DNA of 64,000 bases. It comes from Laetmonice hystrix. Taxonomy: Eukaryota. The stretch lies in contig OZ249439.1 of NCBI GenBank assembly GCA_965235115.1, forward strand, positions 23,684,001 through 23,748,000. The letters are read 5' to 3'. Below the pieces are notes generated by a model that saw only the letters and a program-made list of their open reading frames with translations, was not told the DNA's origin and ran no database searches. This document shows positions 1-21,699 of this stretch, piece after piece. Each line of letters opens with the position of its first letter. Position 1 is the stretch's first letter. A program made the position numbers and the translations under genes.

Positions 1-835
1 GAGACGGTGTGGCTGGAGTGGGGGAAAATGGACTAAGGTGTTAAATATGGGCAAAGAGGGGAGGCGAGACATAACACAGTATATAGTTGATAATGAAATA
101 TATTGGTCACTTCACGGTCCCTGACCCGTTGTGGTTGGCGGCTTACCTGTTTCATGTGCACGTCATTTACAAATCAAGATAGCGGGTTTAGACAGAGGGA
201 GGGGGGTACATCTCTTGGGAGAGCGCCACTCCTTTGGGAGGCGAGCCAGCTAGCAACACACACCGCGGAACAGCAGGGTAGGTCTTCGGCGCAGAAGGTA
301 GCACTGGGTTGGAAGGCTCGGCATTGACCTATCAGTCGCCAGCCTCAGCCGGACCAGGTTGCCGAATGCACTTCCGCTGCTGGAAACTGAAGAATCTCTT
401 GTAGACCAGTGCCGCCAACTGCGCGCTTACTCCGCTCTCCCGACTGCTGCTCTACTGCTGCTCTACTGCTGCTCTACTGCTGCTCAGGCGGGTGGTGGTG
501 CTGGCTGCCGTCCCATCGGAGAGGGTGGATCACTCTCCCCGAATACAGGGCGTGCAGGCCCTTATAAAGGGGAGGGGGGCTGCAGCCTACAAGGCCGGCG
601 ACCAGTGAGGGGCAGCCCTCTCCACCCGGCCAGCGGGGCTGACCAATGGGCAAGCATCCCCCCAGGAGTGGCCTGAGATTGACGTCTCAGCTCCCCACTT
701 GGCCACGCCCACGCACGCACAGTCTGGACACTGGCGGTGGGAGGGAGGCCACCACGGTCACCGGCACATACACTAGAATAAGGCCTTACAATAAACTTAA
801 GGGAAAAATGCACACACAAACCCAAAATCGCCACA
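1..835 (-). repeat. 3' LTR (truncated by window edge)
   Basis: Matches 10479-11313 at offset 10478 with no difference seen by eye; the ORF-track translations of both copies are identical; ends ...CGCCACA next to the PPT. Confidence 0.97.
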
Positions 836-850
836 TCCCACCCTACCTTC
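836..850 (-). promoter_or_regulatory. Polypurine tract (PPT)
   Basis: Minus strand GAAGGTAGGGTGGGA immediately precedes the TGTGGCG start of the 3' LTR. Confidence 0.85.
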
Positions 851-939
851 GTAAAAACTCGTCCTCGAGTTTAAGGCAAGGAGGGAACCACATAAACGGG
901 AGTACAATCAAAGCTAAGGTCAACAAGAACGTTGACTGA

Positions 940-1038
940 CAAAAGTATACTTACAAAAGTACGCTTAAAAACACTCACAAAAGTATACTTACAAAAGTAC
1001 GCTTAAAAACACTCACAAAAGTATACTTACAAAAGTAC
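940..1038. repeat. 38-bp tandem repeat (~2.6 copies) in the retrotransposon 3' UTR
   Basis: caaaagtatacttacaaaagtacgcttaaaaacactca starts at 940 and 978, with a partial copy at 1016. Confidence 0.9.
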
Positions 1039-1078
1039 TGTAAAAAGAACTCCTTGGCCTAACACCTGCTTTAATAAC

Positions 1079-1482
1079 TGACCCAAGGAAAAGTAAACGA
1101 TGGGGAGAGGGGCTGATCTGCCTCTCCCTCTCCAGCGGTGGGGTCACACGACAAAACTCTACTTTAACACTGGCCCAGAAAATTAAAAATAACGACTAAG
1201 GGGCTAGTCTGCCTCAGTCTCCAGCGTTGGGGCCTGTAAAACAAAATACGTTAACACAATAATTACATCCTGTCAATCTAACACCGGCCCAGAAAATTAA
1301 AATAACGACTAAGGGGCTAGTCTGCCTCAGTCTCCAGCGTTGGGGCCTGTAAAACAAAATTAACACGAATATCAAGTCCTGACAGTCTGCTTTAAAGTTT
1401 AAACACTTGTGGCTCAGAAAAATACAAAATAGCTACTGGGGCAGGGTGCTAATCTACTCTGCCCCCTCCAGCGTTGGAGCCA
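1079..1482 (-). ncRNA. Four tandem copies of an unnamed structured (pseudoknot) RNA motif in the retrotransposon 3' UTR
   Basis: Copies at 1079-1146, 1172-1234, 1286-1347, 1410-1482. Three different P1 and three different P2 stem sequences all keep base pairing; invariant GCUGG can pair with loop YYAGC. Confidence 0.7.
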
Positions 1483-1502
1483 ATACACTTTATCTTTACA
1501 CT

Positions 1503-1892
1503 TTACATAGACGGGGTCGCCGGAGATTCTAAAGACACAAGAGCCGAGCGCAAGACGTCAATGGCCCTTTGCTGCCTGCTGCCGTTCCTGACCTGTCCCT
1601 CCAACTCGTGGATCCGACCCTGCCGGGCGTCGATGGCCTGTTGATGGGCCGTTCCTAGGTCTTGCAGGTGGAGCTCGTAAAGCTGCTCCCGCCTATTCCA
1701 ATACGCCCGTTGTCGCGTTGTCAGGAACTCCTGTAGATCTCTGGCGTAGCAGAGCCACTCCTCAATACTAGCCAGCTGCTGCTGCAGCTGGGTCAGATGC
1801 AGCCCGCGTCCCTCCCTGTCAGCCGGGACGGGCTGAGCGTCGAGTGCCGGTGTGACCAGACTCTCAGACGGGGGGGCGCGTGGGTGACCCAT
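1503..1892 (-). CDS. Accessory ORF of the retrotransposon (helical/coiled-coil, not env); possibly the C-terminal part of a longer interrupted ORF starting at 2322
   Basis: 129-aa ORF with heptad-like L/Q/E/R-rich segment (LTQLQQQLASIEEW...IHELEGQV), no hydrophobic TM segment, in a GC-rich island within otherwise AT-rich 3' sequence. Confidence 0.55.
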   Translation of the reverse strand: MGHPRAPPSESLVTPALDAQPVPADREGRGLHLTQLQQQLASIEEWLCYARDLQEFLTTRQRAYWNRREQLYELHLQDLGTAHQQAIDARQGRIHELEGQVRNGSRQQRAIDVLRSALVSLESPATPSM

Positions 1893-2550
1893 TCCTAAGT
1901 TGGGGAGTTGGTGCTGGGGTGGCCGCCGGACGCCCTACTGTGGACGCCGCTGGTGTCTGGCCCTGCGGTGGGGGGTTCTGGGGAGGACCCTCCCTGGTTG
2001 GAGGTCTGTCTGTAGATTCCCGATGATTCCTGCCTGACGGTCCCGATGGTGCCGGCCTAGAGTGCCGTGGTGACCCTCGGCGGCCCATCTCTCTCTCTGC
2101 CGACGGTGGCTGGCCTCACGGGGGTGCCCAGGCTGCCCTCCGGTGCGTGCTCCTCGGTGGCCGGGCCGAGTTCGGTCGGCCAGGTGGGGCCTGTCTCTGC
2201 TGGTCGGGGGTCGGCGCTGCCCTCCCTGGGGGCGTGTGACGTCGGGGTTCGGCTGGCCTCCCCTGGCCGCCGCTAGTTTCTCCGTCAAAATCGGTGCCCG
2301 CGTGAATCTCAATAGTGTCCATGACAGCAACTTAGAATGACTTGTTATATCGACCTAGTACAACTCTAGAATGAGCGTCAGTCTCTCCAGCCCTACATAA
2401 TTATACCCTCCAAACTAGGCAAGTAATAAATAGAAGCCTTGTTTAACTTTTATACCTTTTGTAATTTGACACTTTCTTTGCTAACTTGGGGGTTTCACAT
2501 CCTACCCGGTCGTCTCGGCGGGCAGGCAACATCATCCTCACCGCAACTAA

Positions 2551-2660
2551 CGGTTGTCCATAAAAGTATCAGGCTGCTGAGGGTTGTCCATAAAAGTATC
2601 CGACTGCTGATGGTTGTCCATAAAACCACCCGGTTTTGTGTAGTAGTCCCTAAAACAATT
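2551..2660. repeat. 30-bp tandem repeat (3 copies plus a degenerate 4th)
   Basis: ggttgtccataaaagtatc...ctgctga at a 30-bp period. Confidence 0.85.
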
Positions 2661-4589
2661 AGTGGGGGGGTGTCGGCGGCAGATCAACAGATCAAGGGGA
2701 CTTGCCGCAGTCCGTCCTGTGCGCTGGAGGACGACCCCCTGCCGGGGCCTGGACCACGGGGAGGGTGGCGGTGCCACCACGCTGGCCCCCTCATGGCACC
2801 TAACTGGGCATGACCAACAGACAAACACCCTTCCTCTAGTCTCCAATCAACTAGTTAGTAATACAAAACTACCTAACTACCCATCATATATAGATGGAAT
2901 CTGTGTCCCGCGGAGTTTCCTACCGACCATATTACGTCATACTACAAACTCCAATAATAACTGTTTTGAAACTATAGGCTTCCCTTAATGCTTCGCTCCA
3001 CATGGGGCTCTGTAATAGGACTCAAGTCATATGCAAAAACTGGTGGTCGAATACCTTCAACCTTCCATAAACACGATAAATATGTGAGAAATAATCACAC
3101 CTAAAAGACTAATTCAAACAACTGAAATACATAATGTGCTTGCCGCCATATCACTGTCCACCAAATACATGTACATGTGTATGTACTCAGTAACCCTACC
3201 TAACAGGGAAACTGTCACTGAAATAGGTCCCTTGACTTATTCTAACTGGTCCTGGTTAAAACAGGGATCACACCCACTGACATAGAATATAAAATATTTC
3301 CGTGATCAACTACAAGGACAAAAACTGGCTTAGTCCATAATATAAGAGCGACTATGAGTTCCATGACCCATCTTCACGTAGCTATATCCAAATAGTACAA
3401 TCAAAAATAATAATAAAAAAAACAAACCTGGAGTAACCGCTCAACTCTAGGAAACGTATATCAACGCACAACATCATCTTTCTGGCCAAGTAGCGGCCTA
3501 TATACCCCAGGACCTTTGTCCTGTATCCTCAACGAATATTCACTTTACACATTAAATTTACAAAGGCACTTGCCTATCCGTCTTCACCTATCATATCTTG
3601 TTTCTGCAGAAACCTGGCACCTCCTAACCGACACATAAGTACACCCATTAACACCATCAATAGCCAGCGATAATACACACACCACACACCAACCCTTGTT
3701 AGCTATCCAACTCTCCCCTCATAAAACATTTCCAAGGGATGCTCCTCATCAGAGCCGTCCTGCCGCTAGGATGTAACTCTCCCACACTAGATGTCTTTGA
3801 TGACCGGCGATGTGGTCAGCTCACTGACCGCTCTGTTCTACTGCACTTCACACCTCATCTAATCACTTTGCACTCTTGACCTACCCCGTTGATCAGACAA
3901 CAACTGCGAAAAATTGGAAACTTGCACTCCACACACTCTGTACTAGAATTCACAATAAATAGGTTACATTCACCTGCAACATGTACCTCAAACTGAAGGA
4001 AACAACTTTTGTAGACAAAACACCTGTGTCTACATTTTCACTCTTTAGACTGACTCAGTCCAAATATTCCTCTGATGTTTTTAACTGTATGTCAGTCCTC
4101 AAAGGTCCCAACCTCAACGGATGCCTTCCCTATCACTCAATAAAAAAGATACTGCACCCTCGTGCGACAAAATCAACCACAGCCACAGCTCACTGCTGCT
4201 TCCTTAGCTGTCCATAATGAGTGATAGAGGATCAACCTGACAGCTTGTCCCGATACCAAGAAAAGATAAAACCCTAAGTCTAGCCGCAACTCATTGCTGC
4301 ATCCGTGGCTACCACTGGCGCTTCTCATGGAACGTACGACACTGAATAAAATATATAAAAAAAATGCACCGAACCTATTGCAGACGAGACAACAAAAGTC
4401 TATACTTTGGGACTCACACACACATCAGGCAGACTCTCGACTGCTTACTAATCTCTTCAACTATTTCAACAACCTGGGCGTACATGTGTGAATACACTAG
4501 TTAACACCACTACTCCTTCCCTTTCTTTCATCTCTCGCAGTTATCATCCCTCCTGTTCAAACGTTACTTGGCGGTCTATTCGTTATACT

Positions 4590-7500
4590 TTAATCGTCAT
4601 TTTCAGAGCTTTCAGTTGTGGTTTCGCTGTCACCGTGGTGTGCTGTATCGTCTGGTGCGGCGGTGTTGGGGGCGGGTCCCGGTTCTACTGGCACCCAGGG
4701 GTCAGGGAGGTCATTCTGACAACAGACCTTCAACGAGTCGATGTGTACGATTTTTGTTTTGCCACCTGGCTTAAGCTGTATTTCTAGGTTTAATTGGGAA
4801 ATCTGTTTGACCACTAAGTAGGGGCCCGTCCATCCGGTACCAAGCTTGACCTTTGCTCGTGGGGGGTACCAATACCACACAAATTGCCCAACTTTCATCT
4901 GTCGTTCTCTAACGAGCTTATCATAGCCCCGCCGCTGCCTGAGAGACGCCTTGCCCAGTTCCTCCCGAGCCACCTGATGGGCTGTCTCCAGAGACTGACG
5001 GAGCCACTCGGTGTACATTGTGGGGCAGGCGGGGGTATCCTCCCTTGGTCGGCCCATCACCACGTCGAGGGGGACGGCCACCTCCCTACCCAGCATCAGT
5101 TTGTTGGGGGAGAGACGGGTGCTCTCGTGAGCAGTGGCTCTGTAAGCCAGCATGACGAATGGCAGCAAGTCATCCCAGTCGTCCCTATTTTCATTCACAT
5201 AGGCCTTTAACATCCCCTGAAGAGTTCGGTTGAATCTTTCAACCTGTGGGTTGCCCTGGGGATGGTAGGATGATGTCCGGGTTTTCTCTATTCCTAGAAG
5301 GGAACACATTTGTTGAAACAACTTGGATTCAAAATCCCTTCCCTGGTCCGAGTGAAGGATACGGGGCATCCCAAAACGACAAAAAAAATTTGTAACGAGT
5401 GCGTCAGCGACACTTTGTGCGGTTTGGTCTGGTAAAGCATATGCCTCCGTCCACTTGCTAAAATGACACGTAGCTACAAGGATAACCTTATTGCCGTTGG
5501 CTGTTTTGGGGAGTTCCCCCAGGATGTCAATAGAAACTCTCTCCATAGGGTAACCTGCAAAATCTTGTTTGAGGGGGGCGCGCCCCCTGGGGGGACCATC
5601 TTTTGTTCGGCAGCATACTTCGCACTTGGCACACCAACTGATGACATCATTTTTGTAACCTCCCCAATAAAACCTTTGCTTTATGCTGGCGAGGGACTTA
5701 TTTATACCCAGATGGCCACCAGTCTTGTTGTTATGTAGTTGTTTCATAACCATTGGCCTCATGTTCGTGGGGACCACTAGTTGTGCATACCCAGTGCCAC
5801 CCAAGGGTGCCAACCGGTACAAGATACCATTGATTAATTTCAGCCTCTCCCACTGTGACCACATATCCTTGACCTCTTGACCCCATGGCTTTACAACTTG
5901 ATAGGGGGGTTTCCCTTCGTCCATCCATTTGAGTATTTGTGATATACTCTTGTCTGCTGCCTGGCTAGTTTTAATGTCCTCTCCGCTCAGTCCCTGTAAC
6001 CAATTACCGTGGCCCAGCCACTCAGGTTCAGGGGAGGGTGGGGCGGGAACAGCGCCGCCATTGTCCACCTCATTGCTCCCACCACTGGCATGATCCGGTC
6101 GGCCCTCGACCACATCGTCTTCATTGCCACTGGCCTCATCTCCCTCATCTTTATTGCTACTGGCCTCATCTCCCTCATCTTCATTGCCGCTGGACTCACT
6201 TCCCTCCGACTCGCGTCCAGGGTCAACTGGCGCCCTTTGATCTCGCCGCCTGGCCTGGGCTCTGGTGGTGGCCGCCACCATGTGACTGCATGGAGGGGTG
6301 TCCACCGCGGGGGTGGAGCACTGTGGACAACCAACACGAAGGCAGGGCTTGGCCCTCCTCCCCCCAGGCCCCCTGCTTAGAGCGTCTGCATTCCCATGCC
6401 GTGGCCCTGGTCTATGCTCAATGGTAAAGTCGTAGGTTCCCAATACAGATAACCATCTTGCCAGCATCCCCTCTGGCTCCTTAAAGTTTCTGAGCCACCG
6501 CAGAGATGCGTGATCCGTGCGAACAGTGAACTTGCGCCCCCACAGAAAATGCCTGAACGTTTTAATGAACTTTACCACAGCCAGCAGTTCTCTATATGTT
6601 GTGCAATAGGCCCTCTGTGTCTTGCTTAACGATTTACTGTCGTAGCAAATTACTCGTTCTGATTCTCCCTGTCGCTGCGACAAAACTGCCCCAATCGCGA
6701 AACCACTGGCGTCAACATCCAAGATAAAGGGATCGGAGGGCGTGGGGTAGGAGAGTACTGGGGAATTGGTGAGGAGATCCTTTAATTGTTGGAACGCGGT
6801 TTGACATGACTCGTCCCAATGGAATTTACACCCTTTTTCTGTCAGTCTATGAAGTGGGGCTGCCACCGACGCGAAGTTGGGGATGAATTTCCTGTAATAG
6901 GAGGCGAGGCCGAGAAAACTTCGCACGTCTGAAACGGAACGAGGGGTTGACCAATCCTTTACAGCTGAAACCTTGTCTGGATCACAGCGTACCCCATCTG
7001 CCGACACGATATGTCCTAGGTACTTAACGCTCCGTTGAAACAATAGGCACTTGTCTGGCCGAAGCTTGAGGTCGGCCTGGCGGAGCCGGGTTAGTACAAG
7101 TTTCAGATTACTCTTGGTGGCCGCAAATGAGTTTCCAGGGACCAGGAGATCGTCCAGAAACGACTGGCATCTTTTCCAGTGGACCCCGTGCAGCATCAGC
7201 TCCACCAGGCGCTGAAAAGTTGCCGGCGCGTTCGCCAACCCAAATGGCATTACATTGAACTCATATAAACCTCTGTGTGTGGCGAATGCTGTCTTAGGCC
7301 GGTCAGATTCAGACATAGGACACTGCCAGAATCCAGCCGCCATATCCAACAAATTATACCAGGTGGCGCCCCCTAGTGTATCTAACGTTTCCGCAATATT
7401 AGGGAGGGGGTAACTATCCTTCCTTGTCTTGTCATTCAGCTGACGGTAATCAACGCAAAAACGGACCCCACCATTTTTCTTACGGACTAGCACCACAGGT

Positions 7501-8618
7501 GACGACCAAGGGCTGTTGCTTGGTCTGATTATCCCCTCGTCGAGCATCTTGTTAATTTCACCATCTACAACTTCCCTCATCGCAATGGGGACCCTCCTGG
7601 GGGGCTGTTTTATGGGCCTAGCATCGCCCGTGTCAATAGTGTGTTCCACCAAGTCCGTCTGCCCAAGCTTTCCATCAGGCCCCATAAACACATCTCTAAA
7701 CTCAAACAAAATCTTTGCCACCTCCCGCCTTTGATCTGATGTGACGTCACTGGGGAGGTTATCAAGTATCGGCTGGAGATGGGGAGGCAGGGTCCACCCC
7801 GGCCGCGGGGGGTCCTCCTCAAGGACGCCAGCCGCGATGTCCACCTCCCCACAGCAGGTGGCATGGGTGTCTGAAAGTGAGTCAGCGGCCAGCAGCTCAG
7901 CGGGGACGACGACCGCAAGGTGGCGACCAGCCTTTATGCAAATATCCTCCCCTCCCACGTTCAGCACGGGCAGGGGGAACTCCGCCGCCGAGGTGTCAAT
8001 TAAGGCTCTGCCGATTACCAGCTCGCCTAGTCCGACCTGACTCCTGGGCTCCACCATCCCTATTTGTTTTGGGAACATCGCTGCCCCCTTTTCTGCACTG
8101 GCCCAGAGAATGGCCTCCTGTCCTGGCTCAATGACAACATCCTCACTCGCGCACACGTGTGCACACGATCTCACATCCCCAGGACGCATGAACACTGCCT
8201 CGCCATTCAGCCTGATGATTTCCTTACTCAAATCGATCACACCATTTTGTTTTATCAGAAAATCCAAACCCAAGACACCCTGAAGACCAGTTATATCAGC
8301 CACCACCGTTTCCTGTTCATACTCTCTGCCCTGTATGCCGAATATCATACTCGTTTTTCCATACACGTCCAGACGATCCCCATTAACTGCCTGTAGTGTA
8401 GAACCGCTATGAACTATCTCTGCCAAACTACCTACTTTCTCAAAAACTGCTCTGTCAATAAGCGTTACAGATGAACCTGTGTCAACGAGCATCTCAACTG
8501 TGACACCACAAATATATACCACAACATACCTACAGCTTCCCTTTTCCAGTCCCCAGATCAACTCGATTTTATTTGACCTATGTTGCTCAGATACACTAGC
8601 TGGCTTGTTGGTCGTCAA
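4590..8618 (-). CDS. pol: Pol polyprotein (aspartic protease, dUTPase-like remnant, RT, RNase H, integrase); expressed by -1 frameshift from gag, true start at the slippery site ~8639
   Basis: 1342-aa open frame: LVDTGS protease; RT motifs (CVDYRQLN, MPFGLANAPATF, FLDD, YLGH); RNase H (DVDASGFAIGAVL, NADALSR); integrase HHCC and D,D,E region (HSDQG, VER). The track's 'M' is a TTG. Confidence 0.97.
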   Translation of the reverse strand: MTTNKPASVSEQHRSNKIELIWGLEKGSCRYVVVYICGVTVEMLVDTGSSVTLIDRAVFEKVGSLAEIVHSGSTLQAVNGDRLDVYGKTSMIFGIQGREYEQETVVADITGLQGVLGLDFLIKQNGVIDLSKEIIRLNGEAVFMRPGDVRSCAHVCASEDVVIEPGQEAILWASAEKGAAMFPKQIGMVEPRSQVGLGELVIGRALIDTSAAEFPLPVLNVGGEDICIKAGRHLAVVVPAELLAADSLSDTHATCCGEVDIAAGVLEEDPPRPGWTLPPHLQPILDNLPSDVTSDQRREVAKILFEFRDVFMGPDGKLGQTDLVEHTIDTGDARPIKQPPRRVPIAMREVVDGEINKMLDEGIIRPSNSPWSSPVVLVRKKNGGVRFCVDYRQLNDKTRKDSYPLPNIAETLDTLGGATWYNLLDMAAGFWQCPMSESDRPKTAFATHRGLYEFNVMPFGLANAPATFQRLVELMLHGVHWKRCQSFLDDLLVPGNSFAATKSNLKLVLTRLRQADLKLRPDKCLLFQRSVKYLGHIVSADGVRCDPDKVSAVKDWSTPRSVSDVRSFLGLASYYRKFIPNFASVAAPLHRLTEKGCKFHWDESCQTAFQQLKDLLTNSPVLSYPTPSDPFILDVDASGFAIGAVLSQRQGESERVICYDSKSLSKTQRAYCTTYRELLAVVKFIKTFRHFLWGRKFTVRTDHASLRWLRNFKEPEGMLARWLSVLGTYDFTIEHRPGPRHGNADALSRGPGGRRAKPCLRVGCPQCSTPAVDTPPCSHMVAATTRAQARRRDQRAPVDPGRESEGSESSGNEDEGDEASSNKDEGDEASGNEDDVVEGRPDHASGGSNEVDNGGAVPAPPSPEPEWLGHGNWLQGLSGEDIKTSQAADKSISQILKWMDEGKPPYQVVKPWGQEVKDMWSQWERLKLINGILYRLAPLGGTGYAQLVVPTNMRPMVMKQLHNNKTGGHLGINKSLASIKQRFYWGGYKNDVISWCAKCEVCCRTKDGPPRGRAPLKQDFAGYPMERVSIDILGELPKTANGNKVILVATCHFSKWTEAYALPDQTAQSVADALVTNFFCRFGMPRILHSDQGRDFESKLFQQMCSLLGIEKTRTSSYHPQGNPQVERFNRTLQGMLKAYVNENRDDWDDLLPFVMLAYRATAHESTRLSPNKLMLGREVAVPLDVVMGRPREDTPACPTMYTEWLRQSLETAHQVAREELGKASLRQRRGYDKLVRERQMKVGQFVWYWYPPRAKVKLGTGWTGPYLVVKQISQLNLEIQLKPGGKTKIVHIDSLKVCCQNDLPDPWVPVEPGPAPNTAAPDDTAHHGDSETTTESSENDD

Positions 8619-8639
8619 GCCAGCCTGCCTTAGTTTCCC
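8599..8639 (-). promoter_or_regulatory. -1 programmed ribosomal frameshift signal
   Basis: Slippery heptamer G GGA AAC (8639-8633) directly before the gag TAA; 8-nt spacer; perfect 9-bp stem GCTGGCTTG/CAAGCCAGC (8624-8599); pol lies in the -1 frame and is open through it. Confidence 0.88.
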
Positions 8640-10348
8640 GACTGCTCTGTGCCCGGTGGACCCGGTTGGTCCTGCCTTGCATCATTTCCCCCCTCTCTTC
8701 GGTTCGTTCTCTGCCAAACTGGATTTCTTCGCCTCATGTCTTCCTGCCTCAGCCTACAATCGGCTTGGAAATGCCCCTTCTTTTGACAGTAGAAACATAC
8801 ACTTTCTTCCCTCCCCGTACGGGTTCTGTTAGTCAGTTCTGCTCGCACTGCTTTTACTATCAATTCCTGCAGCTGGTTGGGACTGAGGGGTGCAGGGGCC
8901 GTCAGTTGGCCGTCAGCCGGCACGCGAGGAGGCATAGAGTTCCCGACAGGCTGTACTGCTGCCAGCCTTCCCCTCCTACTCTTAATAGCCTTGGCTATTG
9001 ACTGGTTCTCAATAGCCACCGTCACGGCCTCCTCCAGCGTGCGACATCGAGCCTTTCTGACGTCCTGCTGCACCTCCTCACTCCACAAACCCTGGCAGTA
9101 CCGTTCGACCAATTCATACTCATCTCTACCATATGTAGCTGGGAAAGCCTTTCTGTATAGGTCTTTGAGGGCCCGCCCAAACTCGTCTACAGCTTCACCC
9201 TTTATCTGGCAACGGTTATAGTAGTCCGTCCTGAAAGCAACTTGTCTGCCTTCAGGAGCGAACCTACTATTTAACATTTGTTTCAGTGACCCAAGGTGGC
9301 GTTTCTGGGATGGCTGGAGGTCCCGCATCACCGTGCTGGCCGGAGGTCGCAGAGCAGCCGCCAGCTGCACGGCAGCCTCGGCATCTGTCCAGCCATTCCA
9401 ACTAGCCACCTGGTCGAAGTGTTCCTCATAATCCTCCCATTCCCGGGCCTTCCCATCGAACTTGTCTAAGTTTAATGGGTCCCTTCTAATTGGTTTGGGG
9501 GTGACTGGGCGGGGGTCTCTGTGCCATCTCTCTATCTCACTATCTCTCCTGCCTCGGCGCACGCTGAATCTGGGGCAGTGGCCACCATCACCCTCATCAG
9601 CCGAGCTATCTGAGTGGCTTGGCCGTTGACTTGGCCATTGGGGGCGGGTGCGTAGAGACCCAGGGCTGTAGAGATCATAGTCTTTTCTGTGGGGGTGGGG
9701 GTTAATATGGGAATATGGTGTGGCCATATGGGAACGGGGGTGACCACGGTGGGGCTCCCTGTGGGGACGGGGGTCATCATAAACTTCTCTCGGTGTGAGA
9801 GCCTCCCGCTGTGGGTAGACCTCCTGTTGATGGTGTCCACCCTGCTGTGGGCTGCCCACCCACTGGCTTGGGCGGGGGGTGGGACGGGTGCGGCGATCTC
9901 CCGATGGGTGGGAGGGTGTCCTCACACAATGGGGCTCTGTCCTTGGCGGGCTGGCCAGTCTGATGGGGCTGTCTGCGTCCCTTCGATGTGGACTGCTGGG
10001 GGACTGGGCGTTCCTTCGATGTGAATTGCTGGGGGACTGGGCGTTCCTTTGATGTGGACTGCTGGGGGACTGGTCTGGCGTTGGGAGCACGTAGTCGGTG
10101 ACCACGTACTCATCTGGGGAGTCACAACTATGCACACAGAGTGCATCAACGTACTCAGCCTGGGAGTCACTATGTACACTTAGTGCAACCGACCCCCGGG
10201 AGTACGCTGCCCGGACATCGCTTCGTTGTCGGCTGCCCAAACTGGAGGTGGATGCATGTCTGCGTAGTAGGCCAGGCAGCGATCTGATAGAGTCAGACAG
10301 CCGCCTGAGCCTGTCCTTTGCCCGGTCCATCTCCGCTCTTGAACTCAC
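8630..10348 (-). CDS. gag: Gag protein (capsid + CCHC zinc knuckle)
   Basis: 572 aa; capsid-type region (LDKFDGKAREWEDYEEHFDQVASWNGW...), CFYCQKKGHFQADC knuckle, disordered S/P/R-rich N-terminus with 11-aa repeats (33-bp repeat at ~9980-10080). Confidence 0.95.
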   Translation of the reverse strand: MSSRAEMDRAKDRLRRLSDSIRSLPGLLRRHASTSSLGSRQRSDVRAAYSRGSVALSVHSDSQAEYVDALCVHSCDSPDEYVVTDYVLPTPDQSPSSPHQRNAQSPSNSHRRNAQSPSSPHRRDADSPIRLASPPRTEPHCVRTPSHPSGDRRTRPTPRPSQWVGSPQQGGHHQQEVYPQREALTPREVYDDPRPHREPHRGHPRSHMATPYSHINPHPHRKDYDLYSPGSLRTRPQWPSQRPSHSDSSADEGDGGHCPRFSVRRGRRDSEIERWHRDPRPVTPKPIRRDPLNLDKFDGKAREWEDYEEHFDQVASWNGWTDAEAAVQLAAALRPPASTVMRDLQPSQKRHLGSLKQMLNSRFAPEGRQVAFRTDYYNRCQIKGEAVDEFGRALKDLYRKAFPATYGRDEYELVERYCQGLWSEEVQQDVRKARCRTLEEAVTVAIENQSIAKAIKSRRGRLAAVQPVGNSMPPRVPADGQLTAPAPLSPNQLQELIVKAVRAELTNRTRTGREESVCFYCQKKGHFQADCRLRQEDMRRRNPVWQRTNRREGGNDARQDQPGPPGTEQSGN

Positions 10349-10391: not shown

Positions 10392-11313
10392 TGTAGCGAC
10401 CCTGACTGTGGGTGTTAGTTTTAGTACAGGGCCGGGGATAGTTTACTTCTCGTTGTGTTCATTTACCTCGAAAGGATTGAGACGGTGTGGCTGGAGTGGG
10501 GGAAAATGGACTAAGGTGTTAAATATGGGCAAAGAGGGGAGGCGAGACATAACACAGTATATAGTTGATAATGAAATATATTGGTCACTTCACGGTCCCT
10601 GACCCGTTGTGGTTGGCGGCTTACCTGTTTCATGTGCACGTCATTTACAAATCAAGATAGCGGGTTTAGACAGAGGGAGGGGGGTACATCTCTTGGGAGA
10701 GCGCCACTCCTTTGGGAGGCGAGCCAGCTAGCAACACACACCGCGGAACAGCAGGGTAGGTCTTCGGCGCAGAAGGTAGCACTGGGTTGGAAGGCTCGGC
10801 ATTGACCTATCAGTCGCCAGCCTCAGCCGGACCAGGTTGCCGAATGCACTTCCGCTGCTGGAAACTGAAGAATCTCTTGTAGACCAGTGCCGCCAACTGC
10901 GCGCTTACTCCGCTCTCCCGACTGCTGCTCTACTGCTGCTCTACTGCTGCTCTACTGCTGCTCAGGCGGGTGGTGGTGCTGGCTGCCGTCCCATCGGAGA
11001 GGGTGGATCACTCTCCCCGAATACAGGGCGTGCAGGCCCTTATAAAGGGGAGGGGGGCTGCAGCCTACAAGGCCGGCGACCAGTGAGGGGCAGCCCTCTC
11101 CACCCGGCCAGCGGGGCTGACCAATGGGCAAGCATCCCCCCAGGAGTGGCCTGAGATTGACGTCTCAGCTCCCCACTTGGCCACGCCCACGCACGCACAG
11201 TCTGGACACTGGCGGTGGGAGGGAGGCCACCACGGTCACCGGCACATACACTAGAATAAGGCCTTACAATAAACTTAAGGGAAAAATGCACACACAAACC
11301 CAAAATCGCCACA
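10392..11313 (-). repeat. 5' LTR (922 bp, complete)
   Basis: TG...CA ends with imperfect terminal inverted repeat TGTAGCGA/TGTGGCGA; contains an 11-bp ctgctgctcta repeat and a TATA-like element at ~11040. Confidence 0.96.
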
Positions 11314-15317: not shown

Positions 15318-16232
15318 ATGGAGATGAACTACGGCGCCACGACCAATAACAACACCAAGGATGGGGGGTCGACGGGCGAGTCGGGTGACACCCCCGGGCC
15401 CCGAGACCGACGTCAAACGACGGGTAGAGACCGTCCGCTGACTGAGGCCGGCTCCACCACCTCGGAGACCACTACTCCGGCCTCGACGGCAGACTCAGAT
15501 TATGAGAAAACCAGGAATCGCCTAGATACCCTCTGCGTGGTCGGATACTGTATCGGCCTGCTCACTTTTGTCAGTTTTTATCACATCAAAGGATTTCGGA
15601 GGTTTCCGTACCCGGCCATAGGAAACCTGCAAGATATTAACCCTAACATGGTTGTTCTCAACCTGTGGGAGGATGGTGCGATTTTAGTGCTTGTCACGTG
15701 GGGCGTCAGGTACATACGAAAGATGGGGATGATTCTCCTTGACCAGTGGTTCTTCAGGGCTCACCTGAGCGAGACGGCAGACAGCGGGGGGTTGTCCGGG
15801 AGGTTGGGCCGATCGCCGCCCTTTGAGAACACCCCGGGTACGGGGTCGGTAACATTCACCTGGTGGTACATTGTTCCGATCATCCTCTACCACGGCGGGT
15901 TCGGCGTGTGGATGGGACTGGCCACTAACTACAACCTACACTACCAGATATCAGACATTGAGTGGGTTATCGTAGGGCTGGTGGTGTTCGTGCTAGGTGA
16001 GTTGATGGTCGTGGGTCGGACAGTGTGGGCAGCGAGGCAGGCCAGGCACTCGACCGACCCCGTGTTTGTCGGCAGTGCCATCATACCCGTCGTCGAGATC
16101 GCTGAAGTTATATCCTGCGTTGGCTACGCATTCCTGACTTTGACTTTACCAGCGTGCATCATGGCCTTCGTCAGGTTTATAATCGCAATCTTAGCCGCAG
16201 TGGCAAAGAAAGTTCACGGAACTGCTTTTTGA
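15318..16232 (+). CDS. Intronless multi-pass membrane protein, divergent steroid 5-alpha-reductase/TECR-like (3-oxo-5-alpha-steroid 4-dehydrogenase family)
   Basis: 304 aa from the Kozak ATG gcatcATGG; several hydrophobic helices; family-like motifs TWGVRYIRK, LYHGGFGVWMG, VGLVVFVLGEL, EVISCVGYAFLT; S/T/G/D-rich disordered N-terminus. Confidence 0.75.
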   Translation: MEMNYGATTNNNTKDGGSTGESGDTPGPRDRRQTTGRDRPLTEAGSTTSETTTPASTADSDYEKTRNRLDTLCVVGYCIGLLTFVSFYHIKGFRRFPYPAIGNLQDINPNMVVLNLWEDGAILVLVTWGVRYIRKMGMILLDQWFFRAHLSETADSGGLSGRLGRSPPFENTPGTGSVTFTWWYIVPIILYHGGFGVWMGLATNYNLHYQISDIEWVIVGLVVFVLGELMVVGRTVWAARQARHSTDPVFVGSAIIPVVEIAEVISCVGYAFLTLTLPACIMAFVRFIIAILAAVAKKVHGTAF

Positions 16233-17028
16233 GAAAAAAAAGAGAGAAGTACTTCACAAACTATCAATCATGCACGCACGCATGTTTCATGTGTAGCCTA
16301 AATTCCAATGGAACTATGAATACACCTATAGTTTCGTATAGGTAAAACATTATCATTTCATCCTTATCATCCCGCCTTCAATAGGGGCCTACATTAGATA
16401 TAATGCATATTTTGATATCCTTTTTATGATATTTTTATTGACACCGAACTTTGCAGTAACTTTGGAAGCTTTTTGAAATATTCGTTATCTTACTGAGACC
16501 GTTATTTTATGTGATGCAGTGTTTATATAGAGGCCTACGTATTTGATCAAGGTGTAGTCGTTAGAATAGGCGTATCCTGAATGCATGACCATAGTATAGG
16601 CCTAGGCCCTATACGGTGGCCAAACGCTAAATCGTCCGCTAACATCCACCCCTAAATTGGTCATATATACATTTATAGGCCTCTGATATATTATAGACCT
16701 ATGTCTGTGGTGCATTGTACGTATTTCTAAGTAAAATAAAAACACGAAGTAAGGGAGCGTATTCATTCGTAGCCTCATAGGCCTATCAACTCCCACCGTC
16801 ACGTTTTGTTTTCTGGACAACCGTACACATAGCATAACGCGACAGAAATGCATTTACTTTCTCCATAACTCATAACAGATAGCACCGGGAATACACTTTG
16901 TGAATGTGATGGGGTGCACGACCAATCCACGCTGCCATGCCTATCGGACCGGAGCCTTCATATGCCCCTATTCCACACAGACCACGAATTTCACGAATCC
17001 CTACGAATTGATGAATTCTCGGATTCGG

Positions 17029-17316
17029 CAGATATCAGACATTGAGTGGGTTATCGTAGGGCTGGTGGTGTTCGTGCTAGGTGAGTTGATGGTCGTGAGT
17101 CGGACGGTGTGGGCAGCGAGGCAGGCCAGGCACTCGACCGATCCCGTGTTTGTCGGCAGTGCCATCATGCCCGTCGTCGAGATCGCTGAAGTTATATCCT
17201 GCGTTGGCTACGCATTCCTGACTTTGACTTTACCAGCGTGCATCATGGCCTTCGTCAGGTTTATAATCGCAATCTTAGCCGCAGTGGCAAAGAAAGTTCA
17301 CGGAACTGCTTTTTGA
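17029..17316 (+). pseudogene. Partial copy 1 (C-terminal ~95 aa) of the reductase-like gene
   Basis: Near-identical to the end of the 15318-16232 CDS from QISDIEW onward; joined to 66 bp of foreign sequence. Confidence 0.85.
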
Positions 17317-18455
17317 GAAAAAGAGAGAGAAGTACTTCACAAACTATCAATCATGCACGCATGCATGTTTCATGGGTAAATTCCAATGGAACTAGGCCTA
17401 TATGATACACCTATGTCTCGTTGATATAGGTAAAACATTATCATTTCATCCTTATCATCCCGCCTTCAATAGGGGCCTACATTAGATACAGGCCTAATGC
17501 ATATTTTGATATCCTTTTTATGATGTTTTTATTGACACTGAACTTTGCAGTAACTTTGGAAGCTTTTTGAAATATTCGTTATCTTACTGAGACCGTTATT
17601 TTATGTGATGCAGTGTTTAGGCCTACCCTATAGGCCTAGAGGCCTACGTATTTGATCAAGGTGTATAGTCGTTAGAGTAGGCGTAGGCCCTATCCTGAAT
17701 GCATGACCATAGTAGGCCTAGATCGATAGGCCTAGGCCGTATATATACGGTGGCCAAACGCTAAATCGTCCGATAACATCCACCCCTAAATTGGTCATAC
17801 ATTTATAGGCCTCTGATATATTGTAGACCTATGTCTGTGGTGCATTGTACGTATTTCTAAGTAAAATAAAAAAAACGAAGTAAGGGAGCGTATTCATTCG
17901 TAGGCCTATCAACTCCCACCTTCACGTTTTGTTTTCTGGACAACCGTACACATAGCATAACGCGACAGAATTGCATTTACTTTCTCCATATTTCATAACA
18001 GATAGCATCAGGAACACCCTTTGTGAATGTGATGTGGTGCACGACCAATACACGCTGCCATGCCCATCGGACTGGAGCCTTCTTAGACGCATAAGAAACA
18101 ATCAAAGATATAGGCCTAGATTAAAACATCTTATGTAGATTTTATTAAAACAAGTTGGATATGATTGGTAACATATGCTAGTCTTCCAGTACAAATAATT
18201 AGGTTAGTTGTAGATTTGACATTCTGTTGGTGAAAAAAAAGTTTCACGAGGTCGAATTTGTGAACTGGGATAAATTTCACAGATAACCCATATTCTCCGG
18301 ACCTCTTACTTTTAGATTGGAAAGGACTGTTATTATATTGGATATAAGTTACAATACCTCCTACATGGTGTTTCTTGTCTGCTCTAAACGTGCAACCTTT
18401 GCCCACGATAGGCAGCGCCATCTCGTGAGGAACATGCAAATTAACGTGGTAGCCT

Positions 18456-19027
18456 TGGGGATGATTCTCCTTGACCAGTGGTTCTTCAGGGCTCACCTGA
18501 GCGAGACGGCAGACAGCGGGGGGTTGTCCGGGAGGTTGGGCCCATCGCCGCCCTTTGAGAACACCCCGGGTACGGGGTCGGTCAAATTTACCTGGTGGTA
18601 CACTGTTCCGATCATCCTCTACCACGGCGGGTTCGGCGTGTGGATGGGACTGGCTACTAACTACAACCTACACTACCAGATATCAGACATTGAGTGGGTT
18701 ATCGTAGGGCTGGTGGTGTTCGTGCTAGGTGAGTTGATGGTCGTGGGCCGGACAGTGTGGGCAACGAGGCAGGCCAGGCACTCGACCGACCCCGTGTTTG
18801 TCGGCAGTGCCATCATACCCGTCGTCGAGATCGCTGAAGTTATATCCTGCGTTGGCTACGCATTCCTGACTTTGACTTTACCAGCGTGCATCATGGCCTT
18901 CGTCAGGTTTATAATCGCAATCTTAGCCGCAGTGGCAAAGAAAGTTCACGGAACTGCTTTTCGAGAAAAAAAGAGAGAAGTACTTCACAAACTATCAATC
19001 ATGCACGCACGCATGTTTCATGTGTAG
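18456..19027 (+). pseudogene. Partial/chimeric copy 2 of the reductase-like gene (stop lost, TGA->CGA)
   Basis: Homology starts at tggggATGATTCTC; frame open; CGA at 18962-18964 extends the ORF to 19027. Confidence 0.85.
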
Positions 19028-20064
19028 CCTAAATTCCAATGGAACTATGAATACACCTATAGTTTCGTATAGGTAAAACATTATCATTTCATCCTTATCA
19101 TCCCGCCTTCAATAGGGGCCTACATTAGATATAATGCATATTTTGATATCCTTTTTATGATATTTTTATTGACACCGAACTTTGCAGTAACTTTGGAAGC
19201 TTTTTGAAATATTCGTTATCTTACTGAGACCATTATTTTATGTGATGCAGTGTTTATATAGAGGCCTACGTATTTGATCAAGGTGTAGTCGTTAGAATAG
19301 GCGTATCCTGAATGCATGACCATAGTATAGGCCTAGGCCCTATACGGTGGCCAAACGCTAAATCGTCCGCTAACATCCACCCCTAAATTGGTCATATATA
19401 CATTTATAGGCCTCTGATATATTATAGACCTATGTCTGTGGTGCATTGTACGTATTTCTAAGTAAAATAAAAACACGAAGTAAGGGAGCGTATTCATTCG
19501 TAGCCTCATAGGCCTATCAACTCCCACCTTCACGTTTTGTTTTCTGGACAACCGTACACATAGCATAACGCGACAGAAATGCATTTACTTTCTCCATAAC
19601 TCATAACAGATAGCACCGGGAATACACTTTGTGAATGTGATGGGGTGCACGACCAATCCACGCTGCCATGCCCATCGGACCGGAGCCTTCATAGACGCAT
19701 AAGAAACAATCAAAGATATAGGCCTAGATTAAAACATCTTCTGTAGATTTTATTAAAACAATTTGGATATGATTGGTAACATATGCTAGTCTTCCAGTAC
19801 AAATAATTAGGTTAGTTGTAGATTTGACATTCTGTTGGTGAAAAAAAAGTTTCACGAGGTCGAATTTGTGAACTGGGATAAATTTGACAGATAACCCATA
19901 TTCTCCGGACCTCTTACTTTAAGTTTGGAAAGGAATGTTTATTATATTGGATATAAGTTACAATACCTCCTACATGGTGTTTCTTGTCTGCTCTAAACGT
20001 GCAACCTTTGGCCACGATAGGCAGCGCCATCTCGTGAGGAACATGCAAATTAACGTGGTAGCCT

Positions 20065-20573
20065 TGGGGATGATTCTCCTTGACCAGTGGTTCTTCAGGG
20101 CTCACCTGAGCGAGACGGCAGACAGCGGGGGGTTGTCCGGGAGGTTGGGCCGATCGCCGCCCTTTGAGAACACCCCGGGTACGGGGTCGGTCAAATTTAC
20201 CTGGTGGTACATTGTTCCGATCATCCTCTACCACGGCGGGTTCGGCGTGTGGATGGGACTGGCCACTAACTACAACCTACACTACCAGATATCAGACATT
20301 GAGTGGGTTATCGTAGGGCTGGTGGTGTTCGTGCTAGGTGAGTTGATGGTCGTGGGTCGGACGGTGTGGGCAGCGAGGCAGGCCAGGCACTCGACCGATC
20401 CCGTGTTTGTAGGCAGTGCCATCATGCCCGTCGTCGAGATCGCTGAAGTTATATCCTGCGTTGGCTACGCATTCCTGACTTTGACTTTACCAGCGTGCAT
20501 CATGGCCTTCGTCAGGTTTATAATCGCAATCTTAGCCGCAGTGGCAAAGAAAGTTCACGGAACTGCTTTTTGA
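20065..20573 (+). pseudogene. Partial/chimeric copy 3 of the reductase-like gene
   Basis: Same junction (gtagccttggggatg); open frame fused to an upstream repeat-derived N-terminus (track ORF 19935-20573). Confidence 0.85.
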
Positions 20574-21699
20574 GAAAAAAAAAGAGAGAAGTAATTCACA
20601 AACTATCAATCATGCACGCACGCATGTTTCATATGTAGCCTAAATTCCAATGGAACTATGAATAGGCTACACCTATAGTTTCGTATAGGTAAAACATTAT
20701 CATTTCATCCTTATCATCCCGCCTTCAATAGGGGCCTACATTAGATAGGCTATAGGCCTAGGCCTAATGCATATTTTGATATCCTTTTTATGATATTTTT
20801 TATTGACACTGAACTTTGCAGTAACTTATGAAGCTTTTTGAAATATTCGTTATCTTACTGAGACCGTTATTTTATGTGATGCAGTGTTTATATAGAGGCC
20901 TACGTATTTGATCAAGGTGTAGTCGTTAGAGTAGGCCTATAGGCGTATCCTGAATGCATGACCATAGTAGCTATAGGCCTATACGGTGGCCAAACGCTAA
21001 ATCGTCCGCTAACATCCACCCCTAAATTGGTCATATATACATTTATAGGCCTCTGATATATTATAGACCTATGTCTGTGGTGCATTGTACGTATTTCTAA
21101 GTAAAATAAAAACACGAAGTAAGGGAGCGTATTCTTCGTAGCCTCATAGGCCTATCAACTCCCACCTTCACGTTTTGTTTTCTGGACAACCGTACACATA
21201 GCATAACGCGACAGAATTGCATTTACTTTCTCCATAACTCATAACAGATAGCATCAGGAACACCCTTTGTGAATGTGATGTGGTGCACGACCAATCCACG
21301 CTGCCATGCCCATCGGACTGGAGCCTTCTTAGACGCATAAGAAACAATCAAAGATATAGGCCTAGATTAAAACATCTTATGTAGATTTTATTAAAACAAG
21401 TTGGATATGATTGGTAACATATGCTAGTCTTCCAGGACAAATAATTAGGTTAGTTGTAGATTTGACATTCTGTTGGTGAAAAAAAGTTTTACGAGGTCGA
21501 ATTTGTGAACTGGGATAAATTTCACAGATAACCCATATTCTCCGGACCTCTTTCTTTAAGATTGGAAAGGAATGTTTATTATATTGGATATAAGTTACAA
21601 TACCTCCTACATGATGTTTCTTGTCTGCTCTAAACGTGCAACCTTTGCCCACGATAGGCAGCGCCATCTCGTGAGGAACGCAAATTAACGTGGTGGCCT

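What the first reader, a model, noticed from the sequence alone, without database searches (positions are those of the whole stretch)
1079..1482. Four tandem copies of an unnamed pseudoknotted RNA, with compensatory changes, in the retrotransposon 3' UTR
On the element's sense (minus) strand every copy reads P1 - CA(A/C)C - GCUGG - A(G) - P2 - (C)AGA-YYAGC-(C) - P2' - U-rich 16-22 nt linker - P1'. P1 occurs as UGGCUC/GAGCCA, GGCCC/GGGCC (two copies) and UGACCC/GGGUCA. P2 occurs as GGGGCAGAGU/ACCCUGCCCC, GACUGAGG/CCUUAGUC and GGGAGAGG/CCUCUCCC. The stems change sequence but stay paired. The invariant GCUGG pairs with loop UUAGC, CUAGC or UCAGC; the two variable positions are always pyrimidines (G-C or G-U), which also identifies the strand. 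The first copy starts ~20 nt after the accessory-ORF stop. I do not see hammerhead (CUGANGA/GAAA), HDV-like or twister cores. Inference: a selected tertiary RNA fold. Candidate roles are an exoribonuclease-resistant element yielding a subgenomic 3' RNA (flavivirus 3' UTRs carry duplicated xrRNAs), a new self-cleaving ribozyme, a poly(A) triple-helix stabiliser, or a packaging/dimerisation signal.
Basis: partly seen in the sequence, partly recalled or inferred. Interest (0 to 1): 0.88.

Follow-up and report, generated by a model that had tools for sequence, protein, structure and literature searches.

The report
Repeated structured RNA module, retrotransposon 3' UTR
A young, intact-looking Ty3/Gypsy retrotransposon carries, just before its 3' LTR, four tandem copies (three independent versions) of a 62-73-nt RNA module. 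Its two stems change sequence but stay paired, so it is a real and unnamed structured element, but the proposed pseudoknot and every proposed function remain untested.

Summary
The sequence observation holds. Four copies sit on the minus strand at 1482..1410, 1347..1286, 1234..1172 and 1146..1079, starting 20 nt after an ORF stop. They lie in the 3' UTR of a Ty3/Gypsy-type LTR retrotransposon whose LTRs are 100% identical. Copies 2 and 3 are a recent 113-nt duplication, so only three versions are independent.

Both nested helices are supported. Seven of 13 comparable base pairs covary, with one A.C mismatch. The stems have diverged as much as the spacers, while two unpaired segments are the best-conserved parts.

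The pseudoknot is only a 5-nt complementarity between conserved segments. It has no two-sided change and a 3-5% chance expectation, and its connectors of 0-1 and 1-3 nt look sterically strained. The helices do not identify the strand, and the sense-strand fold is no more stable than shuffles.

No Rfam family matches.

My best guess (0.4) is a multimerised protein-binding, post-transcriptional element of the genomic RNA, working like a CTE or RRE. Nuclease-resistant, ribozyme and triple-helix readings fail their testable defining features. A non-functional hypervariable 3' UTR repeat remains a serious rival.

The parts
1079..1482 (-). Whole array: four tandem modules with homologous spacers. 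Start-to-start spacing is 135, 113 and 88 nt.
1410..1482 (-). Copy 1 (73 nt): P1 of 6 bp, P2 of 10 bp with one A.C mismatch, 8-nt loop, 22-nt U-rich linker.
1286..1347 (-). Copy 2 (62 nt): P1 of 5 bp, P2 of 8 bp with one G.U, 10-nt loop, 16-nt linker.
1172..1234 (-). Copy 3 (63 nt): a near-identical recent duplicate of copy 2 (113-nt unit, 97% identity).
1079..1146 (-). Copy 4 (68 nt): P1 of 6 bp, P2 of 8 bp with no mismatch, 10-nt loop, 18-nt linker.
1503..2330 (-). Accessory reading frame upstream of the array: two ORFs (131 and 129 aa) in the same frame, separated by one in-frame stop. No Pfam domain and no detectable homologue, so its status as a gene is doubtful.
935..1038 (-). Second tandem repeat in the 3' UTR: 38-nt unit, 2.7 copies.
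836..850 (-). Purine-rich tract directly upstream of the 3' LTR (candidate polypurine tract).
   Evidence: read from the sequence
1..835 (-). 3' LTR, cut by the start of the window. It is 100% identical to 10479-11313.
4590..8618 (-). pol ORF (1342 aa, uninterrupted): protease, RT, RNase H, integrase.
8630..10348 (-). gag ORF (572 aa, uninterrupted) with a CCHC zinc knuckle.
10479..11313 (-). The part of the 5' LTR that can be matched to the 3' LTR. The LTR starts at 11313. Its inner end (about 10391) and a TGG-initiated candidate primer-binding site just after it are inferred only.

Best explanation
The array is a set of paralogous copies (three independent versions plus one recent duplicate) of a small RNA module in the 3' UTR of the genomic RNA of a young Ty3/Gypsy-type LTR retrotransposon. 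Each module has an outer helix P1 (5-6 bp) that encloses a conserved single-stranded segment (CAMC-GCUGG-AG), a hairpin P2 (8-10 bp) with a conserved loop (AGAYYAGC), and a U-rich 16-22-nt strand. What is shown: the two helices are kept by compensatory change while the unpaired segments are kept in sequence. What is inferred: the helices present the two conserved segments as a repeated binding site, and the array acts after transcription as a multimerised platform for a protein. That protein could be a host export or stability factor, or a product of the element itself. It would help the unspliced genomic RNA leave the nucleus or survive, in the way the CTE, RRE and related elements work between the last ORF and the 3' LTR of retroviruses. 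The GCUGG/YYAGC pairing may form, within a module, between modules or between two RNAs, but it is not demonstrated.
For: The element looks intact and young: LTRs are 100% identical over 835 nt and the gag and pol ORFs are uninterrupted. The array lies between the last ORF and the polypurine tract. P1 and P2 appear in the minimum-free-energy fold of every copy. With P2 aligned from the loop, 5 of 8 pairs covary, one of them with three different Watson-Crick pairs, and 2 of 5 P1 pairs covary. Each 5' arm pairs best with its own 3' arm: 7, 8 and 8 pairs against 5-6 with the other copies' arms. A simple neutral simulation gives P of 0.002-0.013 for P2 and 0.03-0.11 for P1 per comparison. Sliding the pairing partners drops paired cells from 90% to 31-53%. 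Conservation is uneven in the way a structured binding site predicts: 5' core 75-91%, loop 70-80%, stems 45-70%, linker 50-68%, spacers 53-61%. Literature: retroelements, including the Ty3/Gypsy element Cer1, need a device to export unspliced genomic RNA, either a structure that binds NXF1 directly or a structured region on which an element-encoded protein multimerises (PMC10309623).
Against: There is no functional or expression data. No homologue could be read, so all covariation comes from three paralogues within one element. The sense-strand fold of the whole array is no more stable than shuffles (z = -0.14), and single modules give z of -0.4 to -1.6, while the antisense strand gives z = -2.8. 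The accessory ORF has no homologue or domain, so a Rev-like partner is not supported. Two more distant Gypsy families (58-61% RT identity) lack the module. The compensatory changes sit in adjacent blocks, which template switching can produce without selection at each step (PMC8794818).
Confidence: 0.4

Rival explanations
1. This is a non-functional hypervariable 3' UTR tandem repeat. LTR retrotransposons often build and reshuffle short tandem repeats between the last ORF and the polypurine tract during replication. The hairpins were made, and their arms kept complementary, by template switching rather than by selection.
For: The location and the variable unit length (135, 113, 88 nt) match the hypervariable 3' UTR repeats described for plant Tat/Ogre elements (PMC7004042). 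A second, unrelated 38-nt repeat lies next to the array. Copies 2/3 are a very recent duplication. The compensatory changes are in adjacent blocks of 3 pairs, a signature of template switching (PMC8794818). The sense-strand fold is not more stable than shuffles.
Against: The unpaired core and loop are clearly better conserved than the spacers and stems, which neutral decay does not predict. Two different helices are kept in all three independent versions, with a single mismatch. The element that carries the array is intact and recently active.
Confidence: 0.25
2. It is a dimerisation, packaging or higher-order folding signal. The loop YYAGC pairs with GCUGG of another module or of a second genomic RNA, rather than within its own module.
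For: The 5-nt complementarity is present in every copy, and the two variable loop positions stay pyrimidines. Pairing within one module leaves connectors of only 0-1 and 1-3 nt, which is strained, whereas pairing in trans is not (inference from geometry).
Against: No pair changes on both sides. The chance expectation is 3-5%. The isolated duplex is weak, -2.9 to -5.8 kcal/mol. Known retroelement dimerisation and packaging signals lie in the 5' leader (general knowledge).
Confidence: 0.1
3. It is an exoribonuclease-resistant element that yields a 3' subgenomic RNA, as duplicated xrRNAs do in flavivirus 3' UTRs.
For: It is a tandem array of compact, self-enclosed modules in a 3' UTR with a possible pseudoknot. 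This is an analogy only.
Against: No Rfam xrRNA model matches, even at E of 10 or less. There is no three-way junction. The possible pseudoknot partner lies 5' of the hairpin and inside P1, so nothing in the secondary structure threads the 5' end through a ring (inference). The fold is not unusually stable.
Confidence: 0.08
4. It is a DNA-level cis-regulatory repeat (enhancer- or insulator-like protein binding sites), and the conserved core and loop are binding sites in duplex DNA.
For: Two short segments are sequence-conserved and repeated four times. The helices give no strand preference.
Against: A duplex-DNA site gives no reason for the flanking arms to stay complementary while changing sequence.
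Confidence: 0.08
5. It is a new self-cleaving ribozyme, or a clamp for the poly(A) tail like the ENE triple helix.
For: It is a compact conserved core flanked by variable helices, in tandem units of about 90-135 nt. One strand of the internal loop is U-rich.
Against: No ribozyme or ENE family in Rfam matches. Only one side of the P1-P2 internal loop is U-rich, and the other side is CAMCGCUGGAG. No A-rich tract follows the array, and the poly(A) site lies beyond the 3' LTR start, at least 240 nt away.
Confidence: 0.06

Closest known systems
Retroviral and retroelement post-transcriptional elements between the last ORF and the 3' LTR (CTE of simple retroviruses, Rev/RRE-type systems, CERV-dependent export in Cer1)
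   Same: The position in the genomic RNA is the same. It is a structured RNA with conserved unpaired segments presented by variable helices. The recognition unit is repeated. The element shares the same problem of exporting and keeping unspliced RNA (PMC10309623).
   Different: No sequence or model-level similarity could be tested or was found. The architecture (outer helix, inner hairpin, U-rich strand) is not that of a long stem with symmetric internal loops. No partner protein is identified, and the adjacent ORF has no homologue.
Hypervariable 3' UTR tandem repeats of plant Tat/Ogre LTR retrotransposons (Macas et al. 2009, cited in PMC7004042)
   Same: These are also tandem repeats of variable unit length between the coding region and the polypurine tract of a Ty3/Gypsy-type element, and several unrelated arrays lie side by side.
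   Different: Here the units carry two helices kept by compensatory change, plus conserved unpaired segments. The host is probably an invertebrate animal, since the best named pol relatives are from bivalves.
Duplicated exoribonuclease-resistant RNAs of flavivirus 3' UTRs
   Same: Tandem, independently folding modules in a 3' UTR, with a possible loop-to-strand pseudoknot.
   Different: There is no three-way junction, no Rfam match, a different pseudoknot topology, and no evidence of a subgenomic RNA.
ENE-type triple-helix stabilisers found in some viruses and transposons
   Same: A U-rich strand inside a helix-flanked internal loop.
   Different: The U-richness is on one side only, there is no A-rich tract nearby, and no Rfam match.

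Membership tests
Flavivirus-type xrRNA | Match to the curated covariance models | tested here: not met
   No Rfam hit at gathering score in the window. No hit at E of 10 or less in 800-1600 on either strand.
Flavivirus-type xrRNA | Three-way junction with the 5' end held in a ring closed by pseudoknots | tested here: not met
   Only two nested helices exist per module, so there is no junction. Ring threading itself cannot be tested from sequence.
Flavivirus-type xrRNA | Stalls a 5'-3' exonuclease and yields a 3' subgenomic RNA | not testable with these tools
   No expression or biochemical data are available.
Plant-virus-type xrRNA | Apical loop of a hairpin pairs with sequence 3' of the hairpin (feature as I know it from the literature) | tested here: not met
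   The only complementary partner of the loop lies 5' of the hairpin.
Known self-cleaving ribozymes (hammerhead, HDV-like, twister, twister-sister, pistol, hatchet, hairpin, VS) | Match to the family covariance model or catalytic core | tested here: not met
   No Rfam match.
ENE-type triple helix | U-rich tracts on both strands of an internal loop, plus an A-rich tract or tail to clamp | tested here: not met
   The 3' side is U-rich and the 5' side is CAMCGCUGGAG(A). No A-rich tract follows the array.
H-type pseudoknot | Two crossing helices, both supported by complementarity in all copies | tested here: met
   GCUGG/YYAGC pairs in 100% of cells.
H-type pseudoknot | Covariation in the crossing helix | tested here: not met
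   Of 5 pairs, 3 never vary and 2 vary on one side only (G-C/G-U). None changes on both sides. Chance complementarity is 3-5%.
H-type pseudoknot | Connecting loops long enough to cross the grooves | tested here: inconclusive
   The connectors are 1-3 nt (to an 8-10-bp P2) and 0-1 nt (across a 5-bp helix). By the usual loop-length rules this is strained. There was no 3D modelling.
CTE/RRE-type export element | Binds an export receptor or an element-encoded adaptor and promotes export of unspliced RNA | not testable with these tools
   Only the position and the modular structured architecture are shared. This is a functional analogy, not membership.
Hypervariable 3' UTR tandem repeats of LTR retrotransposons | Tandem units of variable length between the last ORF and the polypurine tract | tested here: met
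   Units of 135, 113 and 88 nt at 1079-1482, plus a 38-nt repeat at 935-1038, upstream of the purine tract at 836-850.
Ty3/Gypsy-type LTR retrotransposon (the carrier) | LTRs flanking gag and a pol ordered protease-RT-RNase H-integrase | tested here: met

The most novel reading that the evidence does not exclude
The module is a new class of compact pseudoknotted RNA fold of invertebrate Ty3/Gypsy elements. Its conserved GCUGG/YYAGC contact would build a mechanical or catalytic device (nuclease-blocking or self-cleaving) that shapes a 3' subgenomic RNA. That would be the first such element in a retrotransposon.
Probability: 0.1. Interest if true: 0.8.

Novelty: new variant of a known kind. Interest (0 to 1): 0.45.

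Why it matters
Cis-acting RNA structures are well studied in vertebrate retroviruses but hardly at all in the very abundant Ty3/Gypsy elements of invertebrates. A repeated module whose stems covary while two unpaired segments stay fixed is a concrete candidate for a new RNA family. It could also show how such elements get their unspliced genomic RNA exported, stabilised or recognised. It also serves as a caution: covariation among paralogous repeats inside one element can come from template switching, so the claim needs homologues before it is trusted.

Tried and rejected
- **Rfam:** searched at gathering score over the whole window and at E of 10 or less over 800-1600. Nothing relevant was found; the only hit was a 12-nt chance match to a lncRNA model.
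- **tRNA scan:** no tRNA or tRNA-like gene in the window.
- **More copies in the window:** the covariance model R1 found only the four copies. BLAST of the 3' UTR and of the whole element against the rest of the window found nothing.
- **Motif pattern scans of public collections:** a loose pattern in viral contigs gave at least 119 single chance hits. A strict pattern gave 24 hits in metagenome contigs and 16 in prokaryotic genomes. None has a P2 of 6 bp or more, so they are chance matches and serve as a negative control.
- **Relatives through proteins:** the pol search gave one close cluster (77% identity) and many at 62% or less. All members of the close cluster, and the best gag relatives (48% and 74% identity), lie in ENA assembly ERZ26222911, whose DNA the tool could not deliver.
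- **More distant Gypsy families:** two families were fetched (L160-L165). They lack the module by covariance model and by BLAST.
- **pol pattern scan of viral contigs:** nothing found.
- **Accessory ORF:** no exact record, no homologue with the 129-aa or the 144-aa query, and no Pfam domain.
- **RNAalifold on the MAFFT alignment:** misaligned P2 of copies 2/3 and was not informative, so I counted pairs by coordinates instead.
- **Long-range complements:** I searched the element for complements of the conserved core and loop and found none of note.
- **Ideas considered but not tested,** for lack of a reference sequence that a tool had given me: complementarity to the primer tRNA (a bipartite primer-binding site, as in Ty3), and a match to an insulator-protein DNA motif.

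Full report
**Check of the observation**

Read on the minus strand, the region holds four modules at 1482..1410, 1347..1286, 1234..1172 and 1146..1079. Each reads, in order:
- P1 5' arm
- CA(A/C)C
- GCUGG
- A, AG or AGA
- P2 5' arm
- loop containing AGAYYAGC
- P2 3' arm
- U-rich strand of 16-22 nt
- P1 3' arm

The stop of a 129-aa ORF is at 1503-1505, 20 nt before copy 1.

The array is not chance. The shared 11-mer occurs 4 times against 0.11 expected. A covariance model built from the four copies (R1) scores them 80-96 bits, while the best other match in the 64-kb window, both strands, scores 14 bits.

Three corrections apply:
- Copies 2 and 3 belong to a 113-nt tandem duplication that is 97% identical, so there are three independent versions.
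- P2 of copy 1 contains an A.C mismatch.
- The strand call from G.U pairs is not sound for the helices. Copy 1's A.C becomes G.U on the plus strand, and the G.U of copies 2/3 becomes A.C there.

**Context**

Window 1-835 is 100% identical to 10479-11313. Between these repeats, on the minus strand, lie:
- an uninterrupted gag ORF (8630-10348, with a CCHC knuckle);
- an uninterrupted pol ORF (4590-8618) with protease, RT, RNase H and integrase domains in that order.

This is a Ty3/Gypsy-type LTR retrotransposon. The 5' LTR starts at 11313 and the 3' LTR at 835, preceded by a purine-rich tract at 836-850. The 3' LTR is cut by the window start. A TGG-initiated candidate primer-binding site follows the inferred inner end of the 5' LTR (inference).

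Identical LTRs and open gag and pol indicate a recent insertion. The best named pol relatives come from bivalves and other invertebrates, and the host itself is not in the protein collection.

About 2.3 kb downstream of pol there is an accessory reading frame at 1503-2330. It consists of two ORFs in one frame separated by one in-frame stop. It has no Pfam domain and no detectable homologue. The array follows it. After the array come a second, unrelated 38-nt tandem repeat (935-1038), the purine tract and the LTR.

**Are the helices real?**

P1 and P2 appear in the minimum-free-energy fold of each module. The MAFFT alignment (A1) misplaces part of P2 in copies 2/3. Even so, it gives:
- 90.5% of cells paired, against 31-53% when the partners are slid by 1-3 columns;
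- 4 pairs with changes on both sides, against 0-1 in the slid controls.

I then counted by coordinates, with P2 anchored at the loop-proximal G-C pair:
- 5 of 8 P2 pairs covary. One position carries C-G, U-A and A-U in the three versions.
- 2 of 5 P1 pairs covary.
- The only failure is the A.C in copy 1.
- Each 5' arm pairs best with its own 3' arm: 7, 8 and 8 pairs, against 5-6 with the arms of other copies.

A simple neutral simulation applied the observed number of differences to each arm independently. It keeps as many pairs with P = 0.002-0.013 for P2 and 0.03-0.11 for P1. This is a rough model, not a phylogenetic test.

Conservation by segment fits a structured element:

| Segment | Identity between versions |
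|---|---|
| Unpaired 5' core | 75-91% |
| Loop | 70-80% |
| Stems | 45-70% |
| U-rich linker | 50-68% |
| Spacers | 53-61% |

The stems have diverged as much as the spacers but stay complementary.

Two cautions apply:
- The compensatory changes lie in adjacent blocks of three pairs. Template switching can write such blocks in one event (PMC8794818).
- Thermodynamics gives no support on the sense strand. Single modules have z of -0.4 to -1.6 and the whole array z = -0.14, while the antisense strand reaches z = -2.8.

**Is the pseudoknot real?**

GCUGG can pair with YYAGC in every copy (100% of cells), but the evidence is weak:
- Three pairs never vary and two vary only between G-C and G-U. No pair changes on both sides.
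- The two variable positions differ by transitions only, which is what mutation bias alone would favour (inference).
- Shuffled cores and loops of the same composition show a 5-bp complementarity in 3-5% of trials. Because the copies are homologous, this counts as one observation, not three.
- The isolated duplex is worth only -2.9 to -5.8 kcal/mol.
- The UGG of GCUGG can instead pair with the CCA just upstream. This gives 3 bp in all copies and 5 bp in copy 1.

Geometry is a further problem. The crossing helix would be tied to P2 by 1-3 nt on one side and 0-1 nt on the other. By the usual loop-length rules for H-type pseudoknots, this cannot coexist with a full 8-10-bp P2 without strain (inference, not modelled). 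Pairing between modules or between two RNAs would avoid this.

The pseudoknot is therefore possible but not supported beyond complementarity.

**Search for relatives**

No Rfam family matches, either at gathering score or at E of 10 or less. There is no tRNA-like gene.

A strict motif pattern found 24 places in metagenome contigs and 16 in prokaryotic genomes. A loose one found at least 119 in viral contigs. All were single hits. None of the pattern hits I scored has the P2 helix, so they are chance matches and a useful negative control.

Results through proteins:
- The only close family has 77% pol identity, and gag fragments up to 74%. It lies entirely in ENA assembly ERZ26222911, whose DNA could not be delivered.
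- Two families at 58-61% RT identity were fetched. They lack the module.

The covariation test across homologues, which would be decisive, could not be run.

**What it most likely is and does**

Shown: a tandem array of a two-helix RNA module with conserved unpaired segments, carried by a young, intact-looking element in the position where retroelements keep post-transcriptional control elements.

Inferred: the helices present the conserved segments as a repeated recognition site. The array then works as a multimerised platform for a protein that promotes export or survival of the unspliced genomic RNA. It would work like the CTE (direct binding of the export receptor) or like RRE-type elements (multimerisation of an element-encoded adaptor). 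An accessory protein required for export of the unspliced genomic RNA is known for the Ty3/Gypsy element Cer1 (PMC10309623).

I give this 0.4. It is a functional analogy, not membership of any family.

The rivals:

| Rival | Confidence | Main reason |
|---|---|---|
| Non-functional hypervariable 3' UTR repeat, hairpins kept by template switching | 0.25 | Fits the position, variable unit length and block-wise changes (PMC7004042; PMC8794818). Does not explain why the unpaired segments are the best conserved. |
| Pairing in trans, for dimerisation or packaging | 0.1 | Complementarity in every copy, and pairing in trans avoids the steric strain. |
| Exoribonuclease-resistant element | 0.08 | Analogy only; fails testable defining features. 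|
| DNA-level regulatory repeat | 0.08 | Explains the conserved segments but not the complementary arms. |
| New ribozyme or poly(A) clamp | 0.06 | Fails testable defining features. |

The xrRNA, known-ribozyme and ENE readings each fail defining features that could be tested: no model match, no three-way junction, and U-richness on one side only with no A tract.

**Novelty and score**

The module matches nothing curated, and I found no paper describing such an element in retrotransposons. It is best filed as a new variant of a known kind: structured or repeated cis elements in retroelement 3' UTRs.

Interest is moderate at 0.45. The secondary structure is credible and unnamed. However, the evidence rests on three paralogues in one element, the tertiary claim is weak, and the function is unknown.

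In one search I searched with a textbook 5' splice-site hexamer typed from general knowledge. In my private reasoning I also recalled a few short textbook motifs: tRNA ends, an insulator-protein core and ribozyme cores. None carries a virus's name, and none entered any other call. Only the 'noticed in passing' item on splice-like signals rests on one of them. I stopped when I noticed and have deleted nothing.

Noticed in passing
window 935-1038 (minus strand), also 1348-1352, 1235-1239 and 1039-1043: The 38-nt tandem repeat next to the array carries five GTRAGT hexamers on the sense strand (5' splice-site-like). The spacers before copies 2 and 3 and after copy 4 end in a U-rich tract followed by ACAG (3' splice-site-like). 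The window-wide count of the hexamer is not above chance (56 against 59.6 expected). The cluster is a by-product of the repeat.
   Followed up: partly
window ~15600-23100: A tandem array of about five units of about 1.6 kb (macrosatellite-like), 86-100% identical between units. The ORFs inside have no Pfam domain.
   Followed up: partly
window 1893-4589 (minus strand): About 2.7 kb between the pol stop and the 129-aa ORF has no long sense ORF apart from the 131-aa ORF in frame with it. GC falls to 0.39-0.46 at 2800-4400 and rises to 0.63-0.65 at 1600-2400. Its origin is unknown: degenerate gene, captured sequence or long leader.
   Followed up: no
window 1060-1505: The antisense (plus) strand of the array folds more stably than shuffles (z = -2.8; copy 1 alone z = -3.6), while the sense strand does not (z = -0.14). 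A role for the complementary strand, as antisense RNA or minus-strand cDNA, is not excluded.
   Followed up: partly
window 443-485 and 10921-10963: An 11-nt unit (ACTGCTGCTCT) repeated 3.9 times inside each LTR.
   Followed up: no
ENA assembly ERZ26222911 (no locus held): This assembly holds many copies of the closest related family (pol 77% identical, gag of 528 aa, downstream ORFs of 69, 86 and 249 aa) on contigs up to 1.2 Mb. It is probably the genome of a related animal.
   Followed up: partly
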